A DNA stretch of 63,935 nucleotides, filler included, from Reticulomyxa filosa (lineage: Eukaryota; Protista; Foraminifera), in NCBI GenBank assembly GCA_000512085.1. It is 14 parts of 14 records of this genome, joined end to end, with 100 filler letters (N's around TTAATTAATTAA, not from the genome) between each part and the next. Parts side by side here need not be neighbours in the genome. Positions count along the whole stretch, not along the records: positions 43,112 to 52,225 come from ASPP01023946.1; 13 more parts are not named here. The stretch is one strand, 5' to 3'. The notes beneath the pieces are model-generated. The model had not been told where the DNA came from, ran no database searches, and worked only from the letters and a program-made list of their open reading frames with translations. Numbering within the stretch: the stretch's first letter is position 1; the number at the start of each line of letters is the position of its first letter. The position numbers were made by a program, and so were the translations under genes. This document shows, one piece after another, positions 43,112 to 52,225 of the stretch.

Positions 43112-46100
43112 CATTATTCATATTTGTTCAGCAACAAATACTTTACCTCAATGATTGGATCCAAGCAATTTACAATGGATTGCATTGTGTGGAATCAACT
43201 CTGCCAATATGCATTTCACTACGCAAATGCCAAAGACAAGCACAACTTCAGTTGTTTCTTTGTCAGTTGTTTGTTGAGGTCGATCGATCATATGTTTCAT
43301 ACCTTTGGCTTCATTCATCGTCTTCATCGGCCCGTTATTCGAACTTTGCTGGTCGTCTTTTCTTCTGATTTTTTCAAACTCCAGGTTTTGTTTTTCCATT
43401 GTTATATTTTATAATAATGTCTGTATTGCATTAATCACATACTAACAAAAATAATAACAATAACAATAATAACAAGCTACTCCAAAGTAATGTATTTGAC
43501 AATATGAATGTGACTTCTCTTTTGCCGAAATCATTGGAAGGCTCCCAATTTGAATGGGACTCTTTTTTTGGTGCGTTTCTGAAGTTTACATTTATGCCGT
43601 TTATCAACTCTTTGCAAGAATTTGGGCCATCACTGTCGCATTTGAGGCATCCCAACGCGGTTCAATTGTCTCCCTTTCATAGAAATAGCAACATCCGCGC
43701 CACAATGGCCTCACCAATATCGGGTTTGTGGCCATCCTTCCATTTCGCCCCACATAACGCCATGAGATCCCATTCCATGGCCCAACTGTCTCATCGATCG
43801 CGGAGTCGATTGTTCGATCCATTTTTCACGCAAACCTTTCGATCTCAGTTTTTTTTTTTTTTTTTTTTTGTCTATTGTTTCTTCAAAGGGGTTTGTTTTT
43901 GTCATCGTTGCTGTTTTGCAAAGACGTAATTTCTTGGCGTGTTTACATACACAACATGAAAAGGGAGTTGGAAAGCAAAGAAAATGACATTGTTGGGATG
44001 CACGATCAATTGGAAGATGAAGAAGAGAACAATGAGGATAAGGAGGACGGGGATAACGATGATAATGGCAATGGTAATAATAATAGCAATGACAATGGCA
44101 ATAATAATAGCAATGACAATGGCAATAACAATGGTAATGACAATGACAACAAAAATGAATGGGATTGGTGTGGTGATTACGATGGTGAAAATGACGACGA
44201 GAATGAGGAAGAGGAGGACGAAAGTGGTTGTCCACGATCGTTCTTTTATGCAATCGAAGAATACAAGCATTATCTCGAAATGAGCAAACACAAAATCATT
44301 GACTTGTGGCGATTCGATCGCAACGACAGAGATTTGTTAACAACAGGCATTTCCAAGCATTGCGCGTCGCGGACAAGATTCCAAATGTATCTAATCAGCC
44401 AGTTTTACTTTGCTGGGGACGAGTCAATGGATATCAGTGTAACACAAAGTTCACTGGATGCGCGCCACGCCAATGCTTGCAAAAATGTATGGAAAACTAT
44501 CCTTCACACGTGGGTTGCTGCTGTTATTCAAAGTTTTGTGCGTTTTGAGTTTTGCTTGACTTATTATGTGTGTATCATTTTAGGAGTATTGTCTGTGCGA
44601 TTCACATTGTAGGAAACTTGAGTCGAACCCAGTTCCACAACCGTCTAGCAAACAGCGTTCATGAAATTAGCGATGGATTTGGCATTAACTTGGTCAACGT
44701 GTGTTGCGATATATTTCTGAAAATGATTGACGCAGTTTTGTGTGTGTGTGTATGTGTGGTTAATACCACGAGTATCCCCTCCTCTCTCTCCTCCTCCTTC
44801 CCCGAGCAATATGTGTCATGTGTCGACTGTTTAGGAAAATCTATCTCGCATTGATCCCTATTACTTTGTGTTCCCGCAGTACAATCGATTGCAGTTGCGA
44901 GACGAAGCTCGACTCGCAACCACCTACCAAGACATTACAATAATGTCGCGCAGTGATGAGTCGTTGCTACGTGATTGGACAGCCTATCGTAAAAGCAACT
45001 ACCTTCATCATGGCGTGCTTACGGACACAATTATATCTAATGTGCAGCATCAGCACAGAAGGCCATTGGTCAATATTTACAATCAACAGCAGCAGCAACA
45101 ACAACAACAACAACAACAACAACGTGTGAATGATGAACCATTGTCATGGCTGCCAAATGGAAAAGAGTATGCTTTCCATTTCTTACAATTGACAAGTCCA
45201 TCCCATTTTCAAATCATTTGCAATCGTTGCAAGAAATCGAAACAATCTTTTATTCATGTGTGTTTGTGTGATACTGATGACGACAACAAAACAACAAAAA
45301 TTGAAATGAATAAAATAAAATAAAATAAAAAAAATAAAAAGGGGATCCGTTATAAATGCACTTGCTGTAACGATTTTGATTTATGTGAAGAGTGCGAAGA
45401 GACAATGTATCTGGAATCGATTGGAATGGCAACTCCCATTGTGCACAAGTATATGGAATATCAATATAATAAAACGCCTCCCTCTTTGGCCCGCGTTAAT
45501 TGCTGTTACAATCAATGTCCGTTCCAACAATTGACCATTCAAGAGGTGATCCGACATATCCAAGAGATCCATTTTGACGATTCTAGAATTGTCTTGTGTC
45601 CGGTTTGTCAGATCGACGATGCCCCGCAGCAACATTTGCTTTCACAACCCGAGTTTTGTCCATGTCCCATTCATCCTTGCAAAACAACACACAATCACGT
45701 GATATACATTACAGTTTGATCAAGCATTTGGTCGACTGTCATCACTATGAGCACAATCATGCCACTCACGTCATGGTAAAGCTGCCATTGAACGTGATGC
45801 GATTCGGCCAAAAAGTGAAGCTCGGAGTGCTCCCAGTGGAATTGGATCACTCCTCGGACGCGCTTGTGGTGCAGTATTACCAAACCGCGCTCGAGCAAAC
45901 CCATCACAATCATGTCTCCTGCGTCCCATTGTGGCAATGGTACAAGCAACACGTTGTGCATCAAGATTTCAAGTGCTATGGTTGCGGAATGCAACCCATT
46001 CGAGGCATTCGTTTCACTTGTCTCAATTGTACTACCAATGCCAATATCAATATCAACAACATCGATACCAGTACCAATGACCCTTGCAGGTACAAAGTAA

Positions 46101-49100
46101 TCCAATATATATATGTATATATATCTGTAAAAATATTATTATAATTAATAATTAATAATTAATAATTAATAATAATAATAATAATACTTTGATTACAATT
46201 TGCAAATACAAAGTGGGAAAATAGACAACGATGCATCGTTTGTTGAATCTTTGGACAATGGGTTTCATTTGTGCTATGAATGTGAAATGAAGCACGTGAA
46301 GGGAATCACATGCAAGGACTTGTCATCGATAATGCATGACCCTCGCCACACGATGGTTGTCATACGCAAACCCATTTGCAAAGTGACATGGACAGACGAA
46401 GAGGACAAGCGTGACGTCCATAGCACCCGCAGCAGCAGAAGTGACTTGAGTCGATCGCAATTGCTGGACCAGTCCTCCTCTTTGTCCACACTTGTAGATC
46501 CAGGCAATGTGTTCTGGACCAGAGAGGAAGAGGACGGACGTGTACGTACTGCATCCATTCCACTACGTCCAATTGAGTTCCCGTTGCGTATGGGCTCGCA
46601 TGGTCCGCCTTCGGAAGACATGGCCCTCCGAGAGCAATGGTTGCATCAACAACATCAATCGCATCAACAACAACAACAACAACAACAAGAGATTAAATCT
46701 CCTATCGATGTTCACGAACACAAACAAGATGAAACCTCTTCCGCTGTTCCCTCAATTACAACGCAAGCACAACAACGACATCTGTTTCAACAAGATCGAC
46801 TCCTGTATTCTCATCTTATCTCCACCACTCCAGGATTTGACTTTCGATCTGAATGGTTTTTCCTCACCCTTTGCGTAGTTTATTACAGCTTGGCTCCCAT
46901 TGCTTTGCGATACACAGTTACGTTTTGGAATACATTACATTGTATTAATATTGTATTGTCTGTTTTTGATTTTTTTTTTTTGTAAAAAAAAAAGTGCAAT
47001 TGGGACCAAATGAATAGCTTTTACGCAAAGAGATTCAATCGCAAATGCAATTGTTGAACGGGTCAAGGGCAGATGATGAGTTACTGAAACAAATGCTGTT
47101 AAACAATTTACATCGACGCATTGGCTATGAGGCGGAATTGTGGAACCCACAAATCATCAACCGAGTTTGGGCCATATTTTCACTATTTAGCAAGTGGTTC
47201 ATTCTAAACTTGAAACGCAGATACGCAACCAAATTGGAAGTGCGTAAAAAACACATTCGAGAAAAGCAACTTCAATTGGTAGCCGATGGAGTACATTTGC
47301 CTAATTCCAATACCAATGCTAATGTCAATGTCAATGTCAATGTCAATGTCAATGTCAATATCAATGTCAATGTTGATACCACGGCAAATACAAATACAAG
47401 TACAAATGCAAGTACAAATGCAAGTGCAGATGAATATCAAAGATTAGAGGAAATGTATCAACAATTAACAGTGGAGGAAAACAATTTCATAAACAATTTG
47501 CCATCCAATTTGCCGCCGACGTTGGCGAGTCTGCCCGAGTTTATGGTGCTATTCGTCGCTCAGTACACTGCATTCATTGTCACGCACGAAGAATTGATCC
47601 AAAAAAAACAAACCAGTTCACCACAAATGGATCCCTTGCCAATGTTACAGCTTTTTGTCGTCTTGTTTCGTCAGCCATTGCTCATCAAGAATCCACACGT
47701 GCTTGCACAAGTTTATTTTGTTTTCATTTGTATCGTGCACAAATACACACGCATAAAAAAAAAATAAAAAACATTAGATATTGGAACATTTTTGCGAATG
47801 GACCACAATGCGCAAAAAAAAACACGCGGCATTTCGGCGAAGTTGGCTGCTTTCAACGTATATGACAGACTTTATGATCGGCTCGCTGTTGCATTTACAT
47901 GTGTCAATGGACAAACGAACAGCGCTGAAGCCGGTGAAAGTGCCCGTACGAAATAATGTCTGTCGATTGTTGCTATTGTTTTTGGACAAAGATCACTTGG
48001 AAGGTAATCCTTACAATGAATGTAGCAACCACATTTTGCGAAATATTTACAATGACCCTTTGGCATCCAGAGCACGTGTCGCCTTCGTGTCACACCTCAT
48101 GGATGACTTGACGTATATGTTTGACCAAACCTTGCATTTGCTCCATAGTACCATCCATTGTTATCAAGAGTATTTATTTATTGGAGAAATCCACCGCGAC
48201 AATCAACACAAGAAGCTATATTTGTATCAGCAGATTTTGCACGATGATCGCAGATGCAACACGTTTGTCCATTTAGTATTGAACTTGCTGCGAACCTTGG
48301 AATTGTGTGCGAGTTTGGAGTTCTTTCGAACTGATTGTTTGTTGAAAACCGAAGTGAGTAATCAAACTGCACAATTTTTGGTTTTCTATATGAACAAGAT
48401 TTACAAGTGTATTGAGACATTTGACAATTTGATTTCTGGTTAACTTTTTAATATTATTCATTGTTTTTATTTATTTATTTATTACTATTTTTTTTTTTTT
48501 TTTTTTTAAATGTTAAAAAAAAAAATTAAAAAAAATAGGTCACGTTCTTCAGTCGAAGAAACGCAAAGAATCAAATCAGAATGACATGGAATCGAAGGAC
48601 GACGAAAAGAAATACGAAGATTTTTCGCATCCCTCGAATGGCAATCTCAGCGTGAACAATAGTGGTTATATCGGCAGTCGAAATCGACGCTCCAGAACGA
48701 TATTCGAATTTGGAGGGCGTCGGTTCGATGTGAGTTTGGAGTGTGTGGATCACATGTACGAAGTGTTCTTGCACAAACACTACGAAACGACCAATCGCTT
48801 TTTGGCATTATTGACATTGACATTTTTCCATTTGAGCGATAGTCGCGTATTTCTAAAGTCGATTGCAAAGTGTGACCTCTTCCATCTGTCGTCTTTCGAA
48901 CATCTGTCGCTTCATGTGTTGCAATGGTATTTGTTTCAGTTCCGGGATTGCTGGAATGACACATACATCAGTCATAGAGATACCACGCCCGACACAGATA
49001 CTACGACTCAAGAATTGCAGCAAGACTCGAGTGACATTCAAAGAGTGATGGTGGAAAGCGAACACAGTTATGGAAATGAAATGAGCATTGGCAACGATCG

Positions 49101-49880
49101 CAGAAGGGCACATGACGACTTCCGACAATCGTTGCAGCGCGAATATAGTTCCAATTCCAATATGCGATCTGATGTCCGTATGACCACTATGACAACAGAG
49201 GAAAGCTCTGCTCGTCAAAACGAAAACAAAAAAGATGTTGAAAACCGGTGGACGTCCATGTTTCTGCCTAAGCGGCAAAACAAAATGAACAAATTTCCTA
49301 TACGTGAGGGTCTCTCCGAAGAGGAAAGATTGCAAAAAGAACAAAATATTAGGTACTTTTCTTTGTTTTCTTTTTTTTTTTCCCATTGTTGAGTTTATTT
49401 ATTGCAAAAAAAAAAAAAAAAAGAATACGTTATCGAACCGGAGCAGCACAGCGCATGAAAAAGTTTATTAAGTCCTCAAAATCCGGCTCGAAAAATGATA
49501 GCACAACAGAAGCTGGATTGTCGTCCATTATTGCCGAGAGACTAAAGAGCTTATGGCTGAATTTGCATTGTGCAATCGAAGAGCATCGACACGAAATCCA
49601 AAATTTGGACACTTTGGAAATACCTTTACGCTTTTTAGATCCATTAATGCATACGTTAATGGACGACCCCGTTTTGTTACCCTCTTCACAGGTCAATCTT
49701 GATCGAACCACTGTTATGCGTCATCTCCTGTCCAATCCCTTTGATCCTTTCACTCGTGCTCCACTTACAGAGCAAAGCTTAATTGACAATGTTCAGTTAA
49801 AAAGAGAAATCGTCGAGTTCAAAAAACGCCATATTAAGGCAAATATTTCGGGATCAGATGACGGGTTGGAGTTAGATTAA
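43112..49880 (+). CDS. Ufd2/UBE4-type U-box ubiquitin E4 ligase with an inserted ZZ, Di19-type C2H2 and second ZZ module (5'-truncated, many exons)
   Basis: U-box IPLRFLDPLMHTLMDDPVLLPSSQVNLDRTTVMRHLLSNPFDPFTRAPL; Ufd2P-core motifs FDFRSEWFFLTL, LPEFMV, IKNPHVLAQI, FVSHLMDDLTYMFDQTL; ZZ1 CNRC...GIRYKCTCCNDFDLCEEC; HIQEIH...VLCPVC...LIKHLVDCH; ZZ2 CYGCGMQPIRGIRFTCLNC...LCYEC...HDPRHTM. Confidence 0.88.
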
Positions 49881-50537
49881 AATCAAAATTGTTATTAAAT
49901 AAAATACAATACAATAAAAAACTTGTCAGAGTGTTTTTTTATTATTATTAATATTATTTTTAAAAGGATTGAATCCCTTAGTTGTCAACTTAATTAGTAC
50001 TCGTTCCCAAAAGCGATTGTATTCTATTTGTTTGGAAGAGTTACCAGGCCCAAATAATTTTTGCTTGTTGTGTGCTTGCCTTGTTTGCTACTCTCATTAT
50101 TATCCAGCCGTAATGGATTGCACAGATTTGATTGTTTTTTTTTAATGTTTTCCTGAAATGTTGTCTTCTTTTGGTTCGTGAAGCAAAATAAAACATACAA
50201 AAATTAGTAATCAGAAGTTTATAGAAAAAGTACTATTTTAACTTGCAAACACAACTGCGTATTATTTCATTGAAAAAAACATTATATGCGAGTCAACGCA
50301 ATTAAATGCCTTAAAAGCACTAATTGTAACACTTTTCAAGTTTAAGATTTTATTTGATAAATTTGCAAATGCTACCAGATAAATGGATCTATCGCTTAGA
50401 TTGAATAAGGAAGCAAAGATAAGAAAAATATCATGTTTCAAAGCATGAAACAGATTACGAAATAGAGGAGAAAAAAAGGAACAAATACGTCAAGAATTTG
50501 TTTAATTTAACAAAAAATAAAAAAAAAAGAGTCGCTT

Positions 50538-51454
50538 TCACAACTCTTCTTTGTGAAGTTTAGATGTGTCAACAAGCTGAAAAGCAAAGTCAAAACGTGG
50601 CCCTGTTTCAACTCCGGTATCACATGAAAATCCCTCAGCCAATACTTGATCAAGTTTCTGGTTTACTTCAGAAGAAAATGGTGCAATGCATCCTGGACAT
50701 TTGATATTCATTATTGTAACTTTGTGATTCGTTTGGATTGTTTCAGTGTTTTCCCAATCGTTGAAAGCCCATTTATCACTTTGCAATCTTATTTCCTGTC
50801 ATTAATTTGTATTTATATTTGTATTTGTATGATTTGGTGAATCAAGACAAGCACTAAAAAGCATAACCTGCAAACCACTATCATTGATATCGTGATAAGA
50901 TATTTTGTTGCAATCTGGTAACAACAGCAATTCATGATCTCTTCCATTTTTCCAAAACGCTGTCGTTGATAGACATTTATGCTTGAATGGAGCGAACGCA
51001 CTCTCCAGTTGTATATATGTATCATATGTTAACCATGTGGTTTCTGTTGGCTTATCTACGAATTTGTCACATTCTAACATTGAGTTATCGCAACAGTGCA
51101 AAATCCATTTGGATTGCTCCATATATTTTGGATCATCACATTTGGTAAGGTATATGCGTATCCCATTATCTAAATTCATATGCACATAATCATCATTGTC
51201 ATATACATGCTTGGAAGACAATGAGATTCCCTTTTCTACTTCATCATTTTTGTCGATGGCTGTTAGACATCTATTGGATGATAGGTGTCTCACTTGTACG
51301 ATTGGGTTGTTGCAAGGGATTTGCCGTGCGTCCTTGATCGAATTGTCTATATTTGCTTGTGATCTGAGGTGTCTCAAGTTTCCATACCCAAAACTTTCCA
51401 CCTGGGGCAAAATCGACACGATTACATAAAAACTAAAAAGATTACGCTCTTCAT
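50538..51454 (-). CDS. Secreted Cys-rich protein, ricin-B (beta-trefoil) lectin-like; 2 exons
   Basis: Signal peptide MKSVIFLVF[+1 T]YVIVSILPQVES; repeats VRHLSSNRCLT...LTKC...QSKW and IQLES...KCLS...LPDC. Confidence 0.55.
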
Positions 51455-51655
51455 TGTTTCGTTTTGCAAAAATAGTTTTTTTTAAATGTTTCCTTGGAGT
51501 TTTTAGCTTTTGTCGTTTGACCATTAAACATTTTTGGGCGAGTTTTACTATAATACAAAATTTGCATTGTATTTGATCTTTTTTTTCCCCAACCTCTTCG
51601 TTCACAAGTCAAAGGGGGCTTGCACTGACATTGCCAATAACAAAAAATCCTCGAA

Positions 51656-52113
51656 ATGTCACAATCTGAGTCTCCGCTCAATTCTCTGTTATTTGAGAGT
51701 TTATCTTCGTTTATTTCGCGAACAACGAAATTGTTAGAAATAGAGAAGAAAGATGACATAGCGTTAGTTCAAGAAGCGCAAGAAACTTTGACTTACAAGC
51801 AACTGAGTGAGCAAGGGATATGTCTTCGGCATGTGCAATGCATAAACATCCGAACAGGTTTATATGGCCGAACGATGTGCGATTTTGAAGTGAAGACAGA
51901 GCATAAATTCGGAGTCGGTGATTTGATACAGGTCATGGAATTGACAGGAAGCAATCATCCAAGTGCAGGAAGTGACCCGACAAAGAACGACACAAACAGC
52001 ACGGCCATTGTCTCAAAAAACAGTAGCACGACATTGCAAATTGTGTTTGAAGAGCCACCAAATGCACTGCAATTGGGTCATCGTTACACATTGATGTTGC
52101 TGATTGATACAAT
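51656..52113 (+). CDS. IGHMBP2: IGHMBP2/SMUBP-2 (Hcs1) SF1 helicase, first exon only
   Basis: FISRTTKLLEIEK..., KQLSEQGICL, RTGLYGRT, HKFGVGDLI match the IGHMBP2 N-terminus; contig ends in an intron. Confidence 0.85.
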
Positions 52114-52225
52114 GTAAAGACCATAACTTCAAAAACAACAACAAAAAAAAAAAAAAAAAAAATACGTATACTTTTTTTTTTTTTTTTTTTTTTTTTATAA
52201 ATTTAAAAAAAAAAAAAAAAAAAAA

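What the first reader, a model, noticed from the sequence alone, without database searches (positions are those of the whole stretch)
43112..49880. Ufd2-type E4 ligase with a built-in KCMF1-like ZZ/Di19 module: candidate single-chain degron-reading chain elongator
Seen: one + strand spliced frame carries Ufd2-like N-terminal helices, then ZZ1 (from ~45204), a Di19-type zinc domain (C..C..HIQEIH..CPVC..HLVDCH, ~45500-45745) and ZZ2 (~45958-46366). It then resumes the Ufd2P core (FDFRSEWFFLTL, LPEFMV, IKNPH, FVSHLMDD) and ends in a canonical U-box. Known: yeast Ufd2 and human UBE4A/B have no zinc fingers. ZZ plus Di19-type zinc is the hallmark of KCMF1, the substrate-receptor partner of the E4-like ligase UBR4, and ZZ domains such as those of p62 and KCMF1 read N-terminal degrons. 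Inference: this lineage may have fused a KCMF1-like reader into a U-box E4, convergently building a UBR4-KCMF1-like quality-control ligase. ZZ1 keeps the acidic DFD but has N where p62 has the CxxC Asp. ZZ2 lacks these acids and may be structural.
Basis: partly seen in the sequence, partly recalled or inferred. Interest (0 to 1): 0.8.

Follow-up and report, generated by a model that had tools for sequence, protein, structure and literature searches.

The report
Ufd2 E4 ligase with KCMF1-like insert
A foraminiferan (Reticulomyxa filosa) gene encodes a ubiquitin-chain-extending enzyme of the Ufd2 type with a zinc-finger substrate-reading module built into it, a module that in animals sits on a separate protein (KCMF1); the combination is real, shared by a small group of protists, and I found no description of it.

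Summary
The piece is a 9,114-bp Reticulomyxa filosa contig. On the + strand, 43956-49880 reads as one gene: 10 exons, 9 GT-AG introns, 1,711 codons, no internal stop.

- **Domains.** It encodes a Ufd2/UBE4 core and a C-terminal U-box (E 4.9e-24). A zinc module sits inside the core.
- **What the module resembles.** Its best match among solved structures is the ZZ-DZB substrate receptor of KCMF1, by sequence (E 3.5e-12) and by Foldseek.
- **Relatives.** The same insertion lies at the same core position (Pfam profile 155/156 to 162/163) in Nonionella stella transcripts, two R. filosa paralogues and several environmental eukaryotes. One of these is an uninterrupted 1,328-aa ORF, so this is not a gene-merging artefact.
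- **Conservation.** All zinc ligands are kept, and so is the Asp pair KCMF1 needs for N-degron binding.
- **Refinement.** The Di19 fingers appear nested inside ZZ1, whose His pair follows them.
- **Canonical Ufd2.** None of 115 full-length canonical Ufd2 proteins listed has ZZ or Di19.
- **Literature.** No paper in the searched library describes the architecture.

Degron-gated chain extension is inferred, not shown. RNA evidence could not be obtained. I rate it a new variant of a known kind, of moderate to good interest.

The parts
43956..49880 (+). Whole gene: 10 exons, 9 GT-AG introns, 1,711 codons plus stop. Ufd2-type E4 with an inserted zinc module and a C-terminal U-box.
   Evidence: Frame and phase check, no internal stop. 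Collinear matches to the family profile and to paralogues and orthologues.
43956..44532 (+). Exon 1: putative start ATG, acidic D/N/G-rich low-complexity stretch, beginning of the Ufd2 core (NVWKTIL at 44484-44504).
   Evidence: tblastn of paralogue P0002 residues 32-134 onto 44223-44534. No Pfam hit on its own. The start codon is not verified.
44613..44734 (+). Exon 2: Ufd2 core helix with SDGFGINL (44669-44692).
   Evidence: P0002 residues 132-174 match 44606-44734. Aligns with the S-x-DGF-x-LN core motif of relatives.
44835..45257 (+). Exon 3: core motif SRIDPYY...ARLATTY (44844-44927), the last core segment before the insertion. Then a poly-Q linker and the first CxxC of ZZ1 (HFQIICNRC, 45204-45230).
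   Evidence: (family profile E 2.9e-5).
45342..45652 (+). Exon 4: rest of the ZZ1 N-part (GIRYKC..NDFDLCEEC, 45342-45395), Di19 finger 1 (VNCCYNQC..HIQEIH, 45495-45572) and the CPVC of finger 2 (45597-45608).
   Evidence: Pfam zf-Di19 E 1.8e-4. Family profile E 2.1e-22. 100% identical to ETO09696.1.
45715..46089 (+). Exon 5: His pair of Di19 finger 2 (KHLVDCH, 45722-45742), the proposed ZZ1 C-terminal His strand (EHNHATHVMVKL, 45749-45784), a linker, and the ZZ2 N-half (VVHQDFKCYGC..FTCLNC, 45953-46030).
   Evidence: Pfam ZZ E 0.012. Family profile E 8.9e-17. Invariant ligands. Tail test. The 3' end could instead be 46070, as in the NCBI model.
46214..46916 (+). Exon 6: ZZ2 C-half (FHLCYEC..HDPRHTMVVIRK, 46263-46370), a roughly 150-aa low-complexity linker with poly-Q, then the Ufd2 core resumes at GFDFRSEWFFLTL (46833-46871).
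   Evidence: The NCBI model P0001 spans it.
47018..47710 (+). Exon 7: Ufd2 core (LPEFMV 47531-47548, IKNPH 47684-47698) with an N/V microsatellite-coded insert.
   Evidence: Pfam Ufd2P_core E 1.7e-9, profile positions 223-354. P0003 match.
47778..48438 (+). Exon 8: Ufd2 core (FVSHLMDD, 48084-48107).
   Evidence: Pfam Ufd2P_core E 0.016, profile positions 403-542. P0003 is 55% identical over 221 aa.
48539..49352 (+). Exon 9: presumed distal part of the Ufd2 core, very divergent.
   Evidence: Only an open frame of 270 codons with in-phase GT-AG borders. No significant profile match.
49424..49880 (+). Exon 10: linker and U-box (about 49620-49832), stop at 49878-49880.
   Evidence: Pfam U-box E 4.9e-24. 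Family profile E 5.7e-32. tblastn of P0136 and P0152.

Best explanation
This is one Reticulomyxa filosa gene for a Ufd2/UBE4-type U-box ubiquitin-chain elongation factor (E4).

Its helical core is interrupted at a fixed point by a four-zinc module homologous to the ZZ-DZB substrate receptor of KCMF1, followed by a second two-zinc ZZ. The point lies between Pfam Ufd2P_core positions 155/156 and 162/163, roughly residue 370 of yeast Ufd2.

**Proposed mechanism.** The ZZ1 pocket captures the free N-terminus (an N-degron or neo-N-terminus) of a substrate. The pocket keeps the D-x-D pair that KCMF1 needs for N-degron binding. The module is held on flexible linkers looping out of an otherwise intact Ufd2 solenoid. 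The U-box at the other end recruits a charged E2 and extends or branches the ubiquitin chain. Substrate filtering and chain elongation would then sit in one polypeptide.

**Shown:** gene structure, domain identities, insertion point, conservation of ligands and pocket residues, and existence of the same architecture in relatives.

**Inferred:** peptide binding, E4 activity and the biological role.

My confidence is about 0.9 that the single-chain architecture is real. It is about 0.5 that it works as an N-terminus-reading E4.
For: - **One gene.** The 10-exon frame is consistent. Exons match a profile of non-Reticulomyxa relatives in collinear order. Paralogue models bridge N-terminus to zinc module (P0002) and zinc module to core (P0003).
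- **No splicing needed in a relative.** P0152 is an uninterrupted 1,328-aa ORF with the order Ufd2P_core, ZZ, Di19, Ufd2P_core, U-box. The Nonionella transcripts P0136 and P0151 carry all four domains.
- **Same insertion point.** The core breaks at profile 155/156 and resumes at 162/163 in three members.
- **True Ufd2.**
  - Core plus U-box of P0136 hits plant, fungal and amoebozoan E4 proteins at about 1e-60.
  - The AF2 model of P0136 has pLDDT 76, about 90 across most of the C-terminal core and mostly 80-90 in the N flank, and low in the module.
  - That model aligns to yeast Ufd2p at Z 28 over about 620 residues spanning both sides of the insert.
- **KCMF1-like.**
  - The best PDB sequence hits are KCMF1 ZZ-DZB entries 9jni and 9upz, E 3.5e-12, collinear over ZZ and both C2H2 fingers.
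  - The top four Foldseek hits are all KCMF1.
- **Conservation.** 16 invariant zinc ligands and an invariant D-x-D. These are also present in the window.
- **Functional precedent.** KCMF1 Asp29/Asp31 are required for N-degron substrate binding (PMC12286842). ZZ-DZB is the substrate receptor of the UBR4 E4 (PMC7618180).
- **Shared substrates.** In human cells UBR4-KCMF1 and UBE4B act on the same UFD substrates (PMC12552062).
Against:
- The joined protein was neither searched nor folded, by rule.
- Exon 9 and the start codon rest on ORF logic only.
- The R. filosa copy is very divergent. Its core scores only E 1e-9 against 1e-84 in Nonionella, and its paralogue sits on an extreme long branch.
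- ZZ1 has Asn where most relatives, KCMF1 and, from memory, p62 have Asp in the first CxxC, so this paralogue may bind differently or weakly.
- The module models have low confidence (pLDDT 53.6). Pocket geometry and the position of the module relative to the U-box are therefore unknown.
- ZZ domains also bind histone or SUMO N-termini, and the KCMF1 ZZ was reported to support ubiquitylation itself.
Confidence: 0.6

Rival explanations
1. The ZZ module is a second, RING-like catalytic or E2-recruiting unit rather than a reader. The protein would then be a two-headed ligase: the ZZ primes substrates with the first ubiquitin and the U-box elongates.
For: The KCMF1 ZZ domain was reported to be structurally RING-like and required for KCMF1 ubiquitylation activity with UBE2D3 and UBE2A (PMC12286842). 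The module is KCMF1-like.
Against: [quoted passage not shown] The residues conserved here (D-x-D) are the peptide-pocket residues.
Confidence: 0.15
2. The module is a docking or regulatory element. It might tether the E4 to a partner or scaffold, bind ubiquitin, SUMO or histone N-termini, or autoinhibit the U-box. It would not select N-degrons for quality control.
For: Other ZZ domains bind histone H3 and SUMO1 tails (HERC2 and ZZZ3 among the hits). The KCMF1 ZZ surface also contacts UBR4. ZZ2 lacks the acidic pocket. The window copy has Asn for Asp in the first CxxC.
Against: All these ligands are still free N-termini read by the same pocket. D-x-D is invariant across the family. No UBR4-binding C-terminal helix region was seen after the module, though I did not test this formally.
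Confidence: 0.2
3. Gene-model artefact or decaying copy. The zinc-finger exons and the Ufd2/U-box exons would belong to different transcripts, or this R. filosa paralogue is a pseudogene.
For: There is no transcript evidence for this locus. The NCBI model RFI_27680 covers only 454 aa of it. The core is strongly diverged with low-complexity inserts.
Against: 1,711 codons stay open across 9 in-phase GT-AG introns. Exons are collinear with the family profile. All zinc ligands and a high-scoring U-box are retained. The same architecture occurs in an uninterrupted ORF and in transcripts of relatives.
Confidence: 0.05

Closest known systems
Ufd2 / UBE4A / UBE4B (U-box E4 chain elongation factors; yeast Ufd2p structures 2QIZ, 2QJ0, 3M62, 9KHS)
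   Same: Ufd2P_core plus a C-terminal U-box. The orthologue model superposes on yeast Ufd2p at Z 28 over about 620 residues. Core and U-box hit canonical E4 proteins at about 1e-60.
   Different: A 300-600-aa zinc module is inserted inside the core between profile positions 155/156 and 162/163. The 118 other listed hits all carry only Ufd2P_core and U-box in the precomputed Pfam column; two of them (P0161, P0185) proved to be N-terminally cut members of the fused family that still carry part of the module, one (P0162) is a 585-aa fragment starting after the insertion point, and the 115 full-length canonical ones have no ZZ or Di19. The R. filosa N-terminal region is short and divergent. I could not assess whether it keeps the yeast K29-chain-binding loops (residues 51-55 and 105-110; PMC5303827).
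KCMF1 ZZ-DZB substrate receptor of the UBR4/SIFI E4 complex (PDB 9JNI, 9UPZ, 9HXW, 9D9Z)
   Same: ZZ with the D-x-D pocket, plus two C2H2 (Di19/DZB) fingers. It is the best sequence (E 3.5e-12) and Foldseek matches among solved structures. Both are attached to an E4-type ligase.
   Different: - Here the module is covalently embedded in a U-box E4 rather than a separate subunit bound to UBR4 through a C-terminal helix.
- The Di19 fingers appear to be nested inside ZZ1, with the His pair after them. In KCMF1 the ZZ is contiguous and the fingers follow.
- A second ZZ is added.
- An invariant Arg follows the first CxxC where KCMF1 has Leu.
Arabidopsis UBR4/BIG with an internal ZZ and a ZZ-less DI19 cofactor
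   Same: This is a precedent for moving the ZZ reader from the cofactor into the E4 polypeptide itself (PMC7618180).
   Different: That is a different E4 scaffold (UBR4 hemi-RING against Ufd2 U-box). In plants the Di19 part stays on a separate protein; here both parts are in the ligase.
p62/SQSTM1, PRT1 and HERC2 ZZ domains (readers of free N-termini)
   Same: ZZ fold and acidic pocket. They appear as weaker hits.
   Different: They have no Di19 fingers and no E4 context. The window's ZZ1 has Asn at the position of the first-CxxC Asp.

Membership tests
Ufd2/UBE4 E4 ligases | Ufd2P_core helical domain (Pfam PF10408) | tested here: met
   Window exons: E 1.7e-9 (37.1 bits, cutoff 20.4) and 0.016. 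Relatives with the same insert: 2.5e-84, 2.2e-86 and 1.5e-85.
Ufd2/UBE4 E4 ligases | C-terminal U-box | tested here: met
   Window 49386-49880: PF04564, E 4.9e-24, 84.7 bits, profile positions 1-71 of 73.
Ufd2/UBE4 E4 ligases | Ufd2p three-dimensional fold | tested here: inconclusive
   Met for the orthologue P0136: Z 28.4, 622 residues aligned to 2QJ0. The window's own joined protein was not folded, by rule.
Ufd2/UBE4 E4 ligases | Extension or branching of pre-formed ubiquitin chains with an E2 | not testable with these tools
   Needs a biochemical assay.
KCMF1 | ZZ domain with the Asp pair of the N-degron pocket (KCMF1 D29/D31) | tested here: met
   NDFDLC at 45369-45395. D-x-D is invariant in the family. 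The ZZ Pfam hits of relatives score 34.8-62.8 bits. The functional role of D29/D31 is from PMC12286842.
KCMF1 | Two C2H2 fingers of the Di19/DZB type next to the ZZ | tested here: met
   zf-Di19 E 1.8e-4 on the split exon. P0017 scores 32.9 and P0146 32.0 bits, above the 27.5 cutoff. Collinear alignment to KCMF1 9JNI over both fingers.
KCMF1 | Contiguous ZZ (with its own C-terminal His pair) followed by the fingers | tested here: not met
   ZZ1 Pfam matches stop at profile position 35-39 of 45. No His pair follows the third CxxC. The invariant pair H120/H125 lies after the fingers. Placing that tail after the ZZ1 N-part raises the score against a 329-domain ZZ profile by 5.6-14.4 bits over the native continuation in 7 of 7 members.
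KCMF1 | Free-standing cofactor with a C-terminal helix that plugs into UBR4 | not tested
   The module is embedded in Ufd2. After ZZ2 comes a low-complexity linker and then the core. I ran no search for the helix.
p62-type Arg/N-degron ZZ readers | Acidic triad: Asp in the first CxxC plus D-x-D | tested here: not met
   The window has C-N-R-C (45204-45230), so only D-x-D is kept. Most relatives have C-D-x-C. The p62 residue numbering is from memory.

The most novel reading that the evidence does not exclude
Foraminifera and some uncultured relatives evolved a single-chain, degron-gated E4. A KCMF1-type receptor, rebuilt as a topologically new domain with the C2H2 fingers nested inside a ZZ, was spliced into the Ufd2 solenoid. 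One roughly 1,200-1,700-aa protein would then do what the 1.3-MDa UBR4-KCMF1-calmodulin complex does, possibly in place of it.
Probability: 0.3. Interest if true: 0.7.

Novelty: new variant of a known kind. Interest (0 to 1): 0.55.

Why it matters
Structures published in 2025 showed that the giant E4 UBR4 uses the ZZ-DZB of KCMF1 as a substrate filter before extending chains.

A natural fusion of that same receptor type into the other, unrelated E4 scaffold (Ufd2 with a U-box) would have three consequences.
- It would suggest that "second-signal reader plus chain elongator" is a general design that evolution has assembled more than once.
- It links KCMF1-type reading to Ufd2 function in the manner of a gene-fusion (Rosetta-stone) clue. 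This fits human data that both act on UFD substrates.
- It offers a compact, single-polypeptide system for studying how an N-terminal degron gates E4 activity.

The apparent nesting of the fingers inside the ZZ is also a small structural novelty for zinc-finger domains.

Tried and rejected

There is no transcript evidence.

- The joined 1,711-aa model was not searched or folded. I worked exon by exon and with database relatives.

**Searches with limited yield**
- The word-index search with the zinc module of P0136 found only P0136, P0151 and P0152.
- The same search with the family alignment added only unrelated ZZ proteins and one canonical Ufd2. It even missed members of the query alignment, so its blanks mean little.
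- The metagenome scan first failed for lack of conserved stretches. With a tighter alignment it found only two loci with the full module.

**Structure**
- AF2 of the isolated module gave pLDDT 53.6. That is too weak to prove the nested topology or the pocket geometry.

**Taxon of the environmental relatives**
- An atlas search with the neighbouring ribosomal L1 gene was uninformative.
- DNA for the P0185 contig was not available.

**Placement of R. filosa**
- It was unresolved in the Ufd2 tree because the branch is extremely long.

**Literature**
- I did not find the paper behind the Ufd2/Ubc4/K29-diUb structures in the library. The position of the insertion relative to the acceptor-ubiquitin site is therefore not established.

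**Rejected readings**
- Two adjacent genes, and chance zinc-finger-like motifs.
Full report
**Source and setting**

The piece 43112-52225 is a whole 9,114-bp contig of Reticulomyxa filosa, a naked freshwater foraminiferan in the Rhizaria.
- Exon 45342-45650 is 100% identical to ETO09696.1 (RFI_27680, "hypothetical protein", 454 aa). The only contig carrying that protein is 9,114 bp long.
- That deposited model covers only part of the locus and reads through an intron at its end.

Yes.
- Pfam, run exon by exon, gives:
  - U-box, E 4.9e-24
  - Ufd2P_core, E 1.7e-9 and 0.016
  - zf-Di19, E 1.8e-4
  - ZZ, E 0.012. The two zinc hits are weak because introns cut those domains.
- I built a model by hand from splice signals and frame continuity, then checked it by script.
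  - Exons: 43956-44532, 44613-44734, 44835-45257, 45342-45652, 45715-46089, 46214-46916, 47018-47710, 47778-48438, 48539-49352 and 49424-49880.
  - It has nine GT-AG introns of 62-124 nt. Seven have 7-24% G+C, against 42% for the exons.
  - Phases are consistent: 1,711 codons and no internal stop.
- All searches used single exons by reference, or database relatives.

**Is it one gene?**

Four lines of evidence, none of which uses the joined model, say it is.
1. A profile built only from non-Reticulomyxa relatives matches exons 3, 4, 5, 6, 7, 8 and 10 in strictly collinear order. E-values run down to 2e-22 for the zinc exons and 6e-32 for the U-box exon.
2. Two other R. filosa loci bridge the parts.
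   - RFI_23381 (P0002) runs from the N-terminal exons into ZZ1 and Di19.
   - RFI_13303 (P0003) runs from ZZ1 through ZZ2 into the Ufd2 core.
   - They are 44-68% identical to the window, block by block, and differ from each other in their overlap. R. filosa therefore has at least three paralogues.
3. P0152, on a 31-kb environmental eukaryotic contig, is a single uninterrupted 1,328-aa ORF. Its order is Ufd2P_core, ZZ, zf-Di19, Ufd2P_core, U-box.
4. Two transcript-derived proteins of the foraminiferan Nonionella stella (P0136 and P0151, from EukProt) carry the same four domains.

Exon 9 and the start codon rest on ORF logic alone.

**Where the module sits**

- In P0152, in P0151/P0136 and in P0098, the Ufd2P_core match stops at profile position 155/156 and resumes at 162/163. 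The insertion point is therefore the same in all three.
- In the window, the flanking landmarks are SRIDPYY...ARLATTY (44844-44927) before the module and GFDFRSEWFFLTL (46833-46871) after it.
- An AlphaFold2 model of P0136, made with a 45-sequence alignment, has mean pLDDT 76.
  - The segment before the insert is mostly 80-90, and most of the core and U-box is about 90 or more.
  - Residues 118-417, the module, are low.
- The model aligns to yeast Ufd2p (2QJ0, 2QIZ, 3M62, 9KHS) at Z 27-28 over about 620 residues. Model residues 1-938 correspond to yeast 257-955.
- The solenoid is therefore intact and the module loops out at about yeast residue 370.
- I could not establish where that loop lies relative to the U-box or to the acceptor-ubiquitin site.

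**What the module is**

- Among all solved structures, the best sequence matches to the module of P0136 are the KCMF1 ZZ-DZB constructs 9JNI and 9UPZ. E is 3.5e-12, collinear across the ZZ and both C2H2 fingers. Full-length KCMF1 chains follow. HERC2, MIB1, p62, PRT1 and BIG ZZ domains are much weaker.
- The four best Foldseek hits of the low-confidence module model are also KCMF1.
- A clean alignment of six non-Reticulomyxa modules shows 16 invariant zinc ligands, plus invariant D29 and D31 (alignment numbering) in R-D-[YF]-D-L-C.
- KCMF1 Asp29/Asp31 are the residues whose mutation abolishes N-degron substrate binding (PMC12286842).
- ZZ-DZB is the substrate receptor of the UBR4 E4 complex (PMC7618180).
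- ZZ2 keeps its eight ligands, lacks the acidic pocket, and carries a lineage-specific loop.

**A refinement: the fingers look nested inside ZZ1**

- ZZ1 has its three CxxC pairs, but no His pair follows them. Pfam ZZ matches stop at profile position 35-39 of 45.
- Instead, an invariant H-[DN]-x-x-x-H-x-x-x-K strand follows the Di19 fingers. In the window this is EHNHATHVMVKL at 45749-45784. It closely resembles the C-terminal strand of ZZ2.
- The ligand count fits exactly: six Cys plus these two His for two zincs, and C2H2 twice for the fingers.
- I tested this in a script against a profile of 329 canonical ZZ domains. Placing this tail directly after the ZZ1 N-part raised the score by 5.6-14.4 bits over the equally long native continuation, in 7 of 7 members.
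- Both AF2 models place that segment in a β-strand, but confidence there is low.
- I therefore propose the topology ZZ1[Di19], linker, ZZ2. In KCMF1, by contrast, a complete ZZ is followed by the fingers. This remains a hypothesis.

**How widespread is it?**

- The exhaustive phmmer search of 1.84 billion cluster representatives with exon 4 gave 339 hits. Of the 150 listed, only nine proteins matched across both the ZZ part and the finger part.
  - Eight of them are family members: three R. filosa proteins, Nonionella, and four environmental sequences.
  - The ninth, P0148, is a ZZ-Di19-ZZ-Di19-RING protein.
  - The other hits listed share only the 20-residue ZZ core.
- A search with the core and U-box of P0136 listed 120 proteins.
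  - Apart from the two Nonionella proteins, all carry only Ufd2P_core and U-box in the precomputed Pfam column.
  - Two of these, P0161 and P0185, turned out to be N-terminally cut members that still show the end of the module.
  - A third, P0162, is a 585-aa fragment that begins just before the FFLT motif, after the insertion point, so it says nothing about the module.
  - That leaves 115 full-length canonical Ufd2 proteins with no ZZ or Di19 hit.
- In a tree of the core, P0136, P0152, P0098, P0161 and P0185 form one group with 88/81 support. That group contains only insert-bearing proteins. The R. filosa paralogue is too long-branched to place.
- The JGI metagenome scan found only two loci with the full module.
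- The two named sources are both Foraminifera. The environmental members have 43-66% G+C and are of unknown taxon.
- The Nonionella sequences come from a transcriptome, so contamination cannot be formally excluded.
- Full-text searches found no paper that combines Ufd2 or Ufd2P_core with ZZ, KCMF1-type fingers or foraminifera in this sense.

**Mechanism**

- The most likely working is an E4 with a built-in reader. ZZ1 binds a free N-terminus of the substrate, the U-box recruits the charged E2, and chains are extended or branched as in Ufd2 (PMC5303827).
- This parallels UBR4-KCMF1. It also parallels the plant case, where the ZZ has moved into UBR4 itself.
- In human cells, knock-down of UBR4, KCMF1 or UBE4B each stabilises the same UFD reporters (PMC12552062). 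The fusion thus joins two functions that already meet in one pathway.
- The family-invariant Arg after the first CxxC, where KCMF1 has Leu, hints at a different specificity. This is inference.
- Rival readings are listed separately: the ZZ as a RING-like priming ligase, a docking or regulatory role, or an artefact or pseudogene.
- I could not test whether R. filosa also has UBR4, a free KCMF1 or an insert-less UFD2. The idea that the fusion replaces UBR4-KCMF1 is therefore open.

**Verdict**

- The architectural interpretation is supported.
- The functional interpretation is plausible but untested.
- It is a new variant of known kinds: a Ufd2 E4 joined to a KCMF1-type reader. It is conserved in a small protist clade and, as far as I could find, undescribed.

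Noticed in passing
window 51656-52117 (+): Start of a separate gene: the ORF matches the 1B domain of SMUBP-2/HCS1-type helicases (PF21138, E 9.8e-18). It is cut by the contig end.
   Followed up: partly
window 50802-51605 (-): A 267-aa ORF on the minus strand between the two + strand genes has no Pfam match. Whether it is coding is unknown.
   Followed up: partly
window 46071-46224 versus 46090-46213: There are two in-frame GT-AG intron choices in the ZZ2 loop, differing by 10 codons. The NCBI model RFI_27680 uses the longer intron. RNA data would be needed to decide.
   Followed up: partly
window 45405-46985 (NCBI model RFI_27680 = P0001): The deposited protein starts at an internal Met in exon 4 and ends by reading into intron 6. 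Public annotation therefore shows neither the Ufd2 core nor the U-box of this gene. The paralogue models P0002 and P0003 also contain intron read-through or skipped segments.
   Followed up: yes
P0148 (Logan assembly, 332 aa): A protein with two ZZ-Di19 units followed by a RING-H2 finger. This is another case of a KCMF1-type module joined directly to a ligase domain, here with complete, non-nested ZZ domains.
   Followed up: partly
L001:7029-7967 and the contig of P0185: In two environmental contigs, the insert-bearing Ufd2 gene is followed by a Ribosomal_L1 gene on the opposite strand. The conserved neighbourhood suggests these two organisms are related.
   Followed up: no
window 47320-47420 and 44040-44140: Microsatellite-like repeats are translated in frame inside the coding exons: an N-V repeat and a D/N/G repeat. 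Several poly-Q runs are present too. Long poly-T and poly-A tracts flank the gene and fill some introns.
   Followed up: no
L005-L008 (metagenome contigs, 19-25% G+C): Very AT-rich environmental contigs encode only the ZZ N-part (about 33-39 residues, 50-55% identical). They are not members of the fused family as far as can be seen.
   Followed up: no
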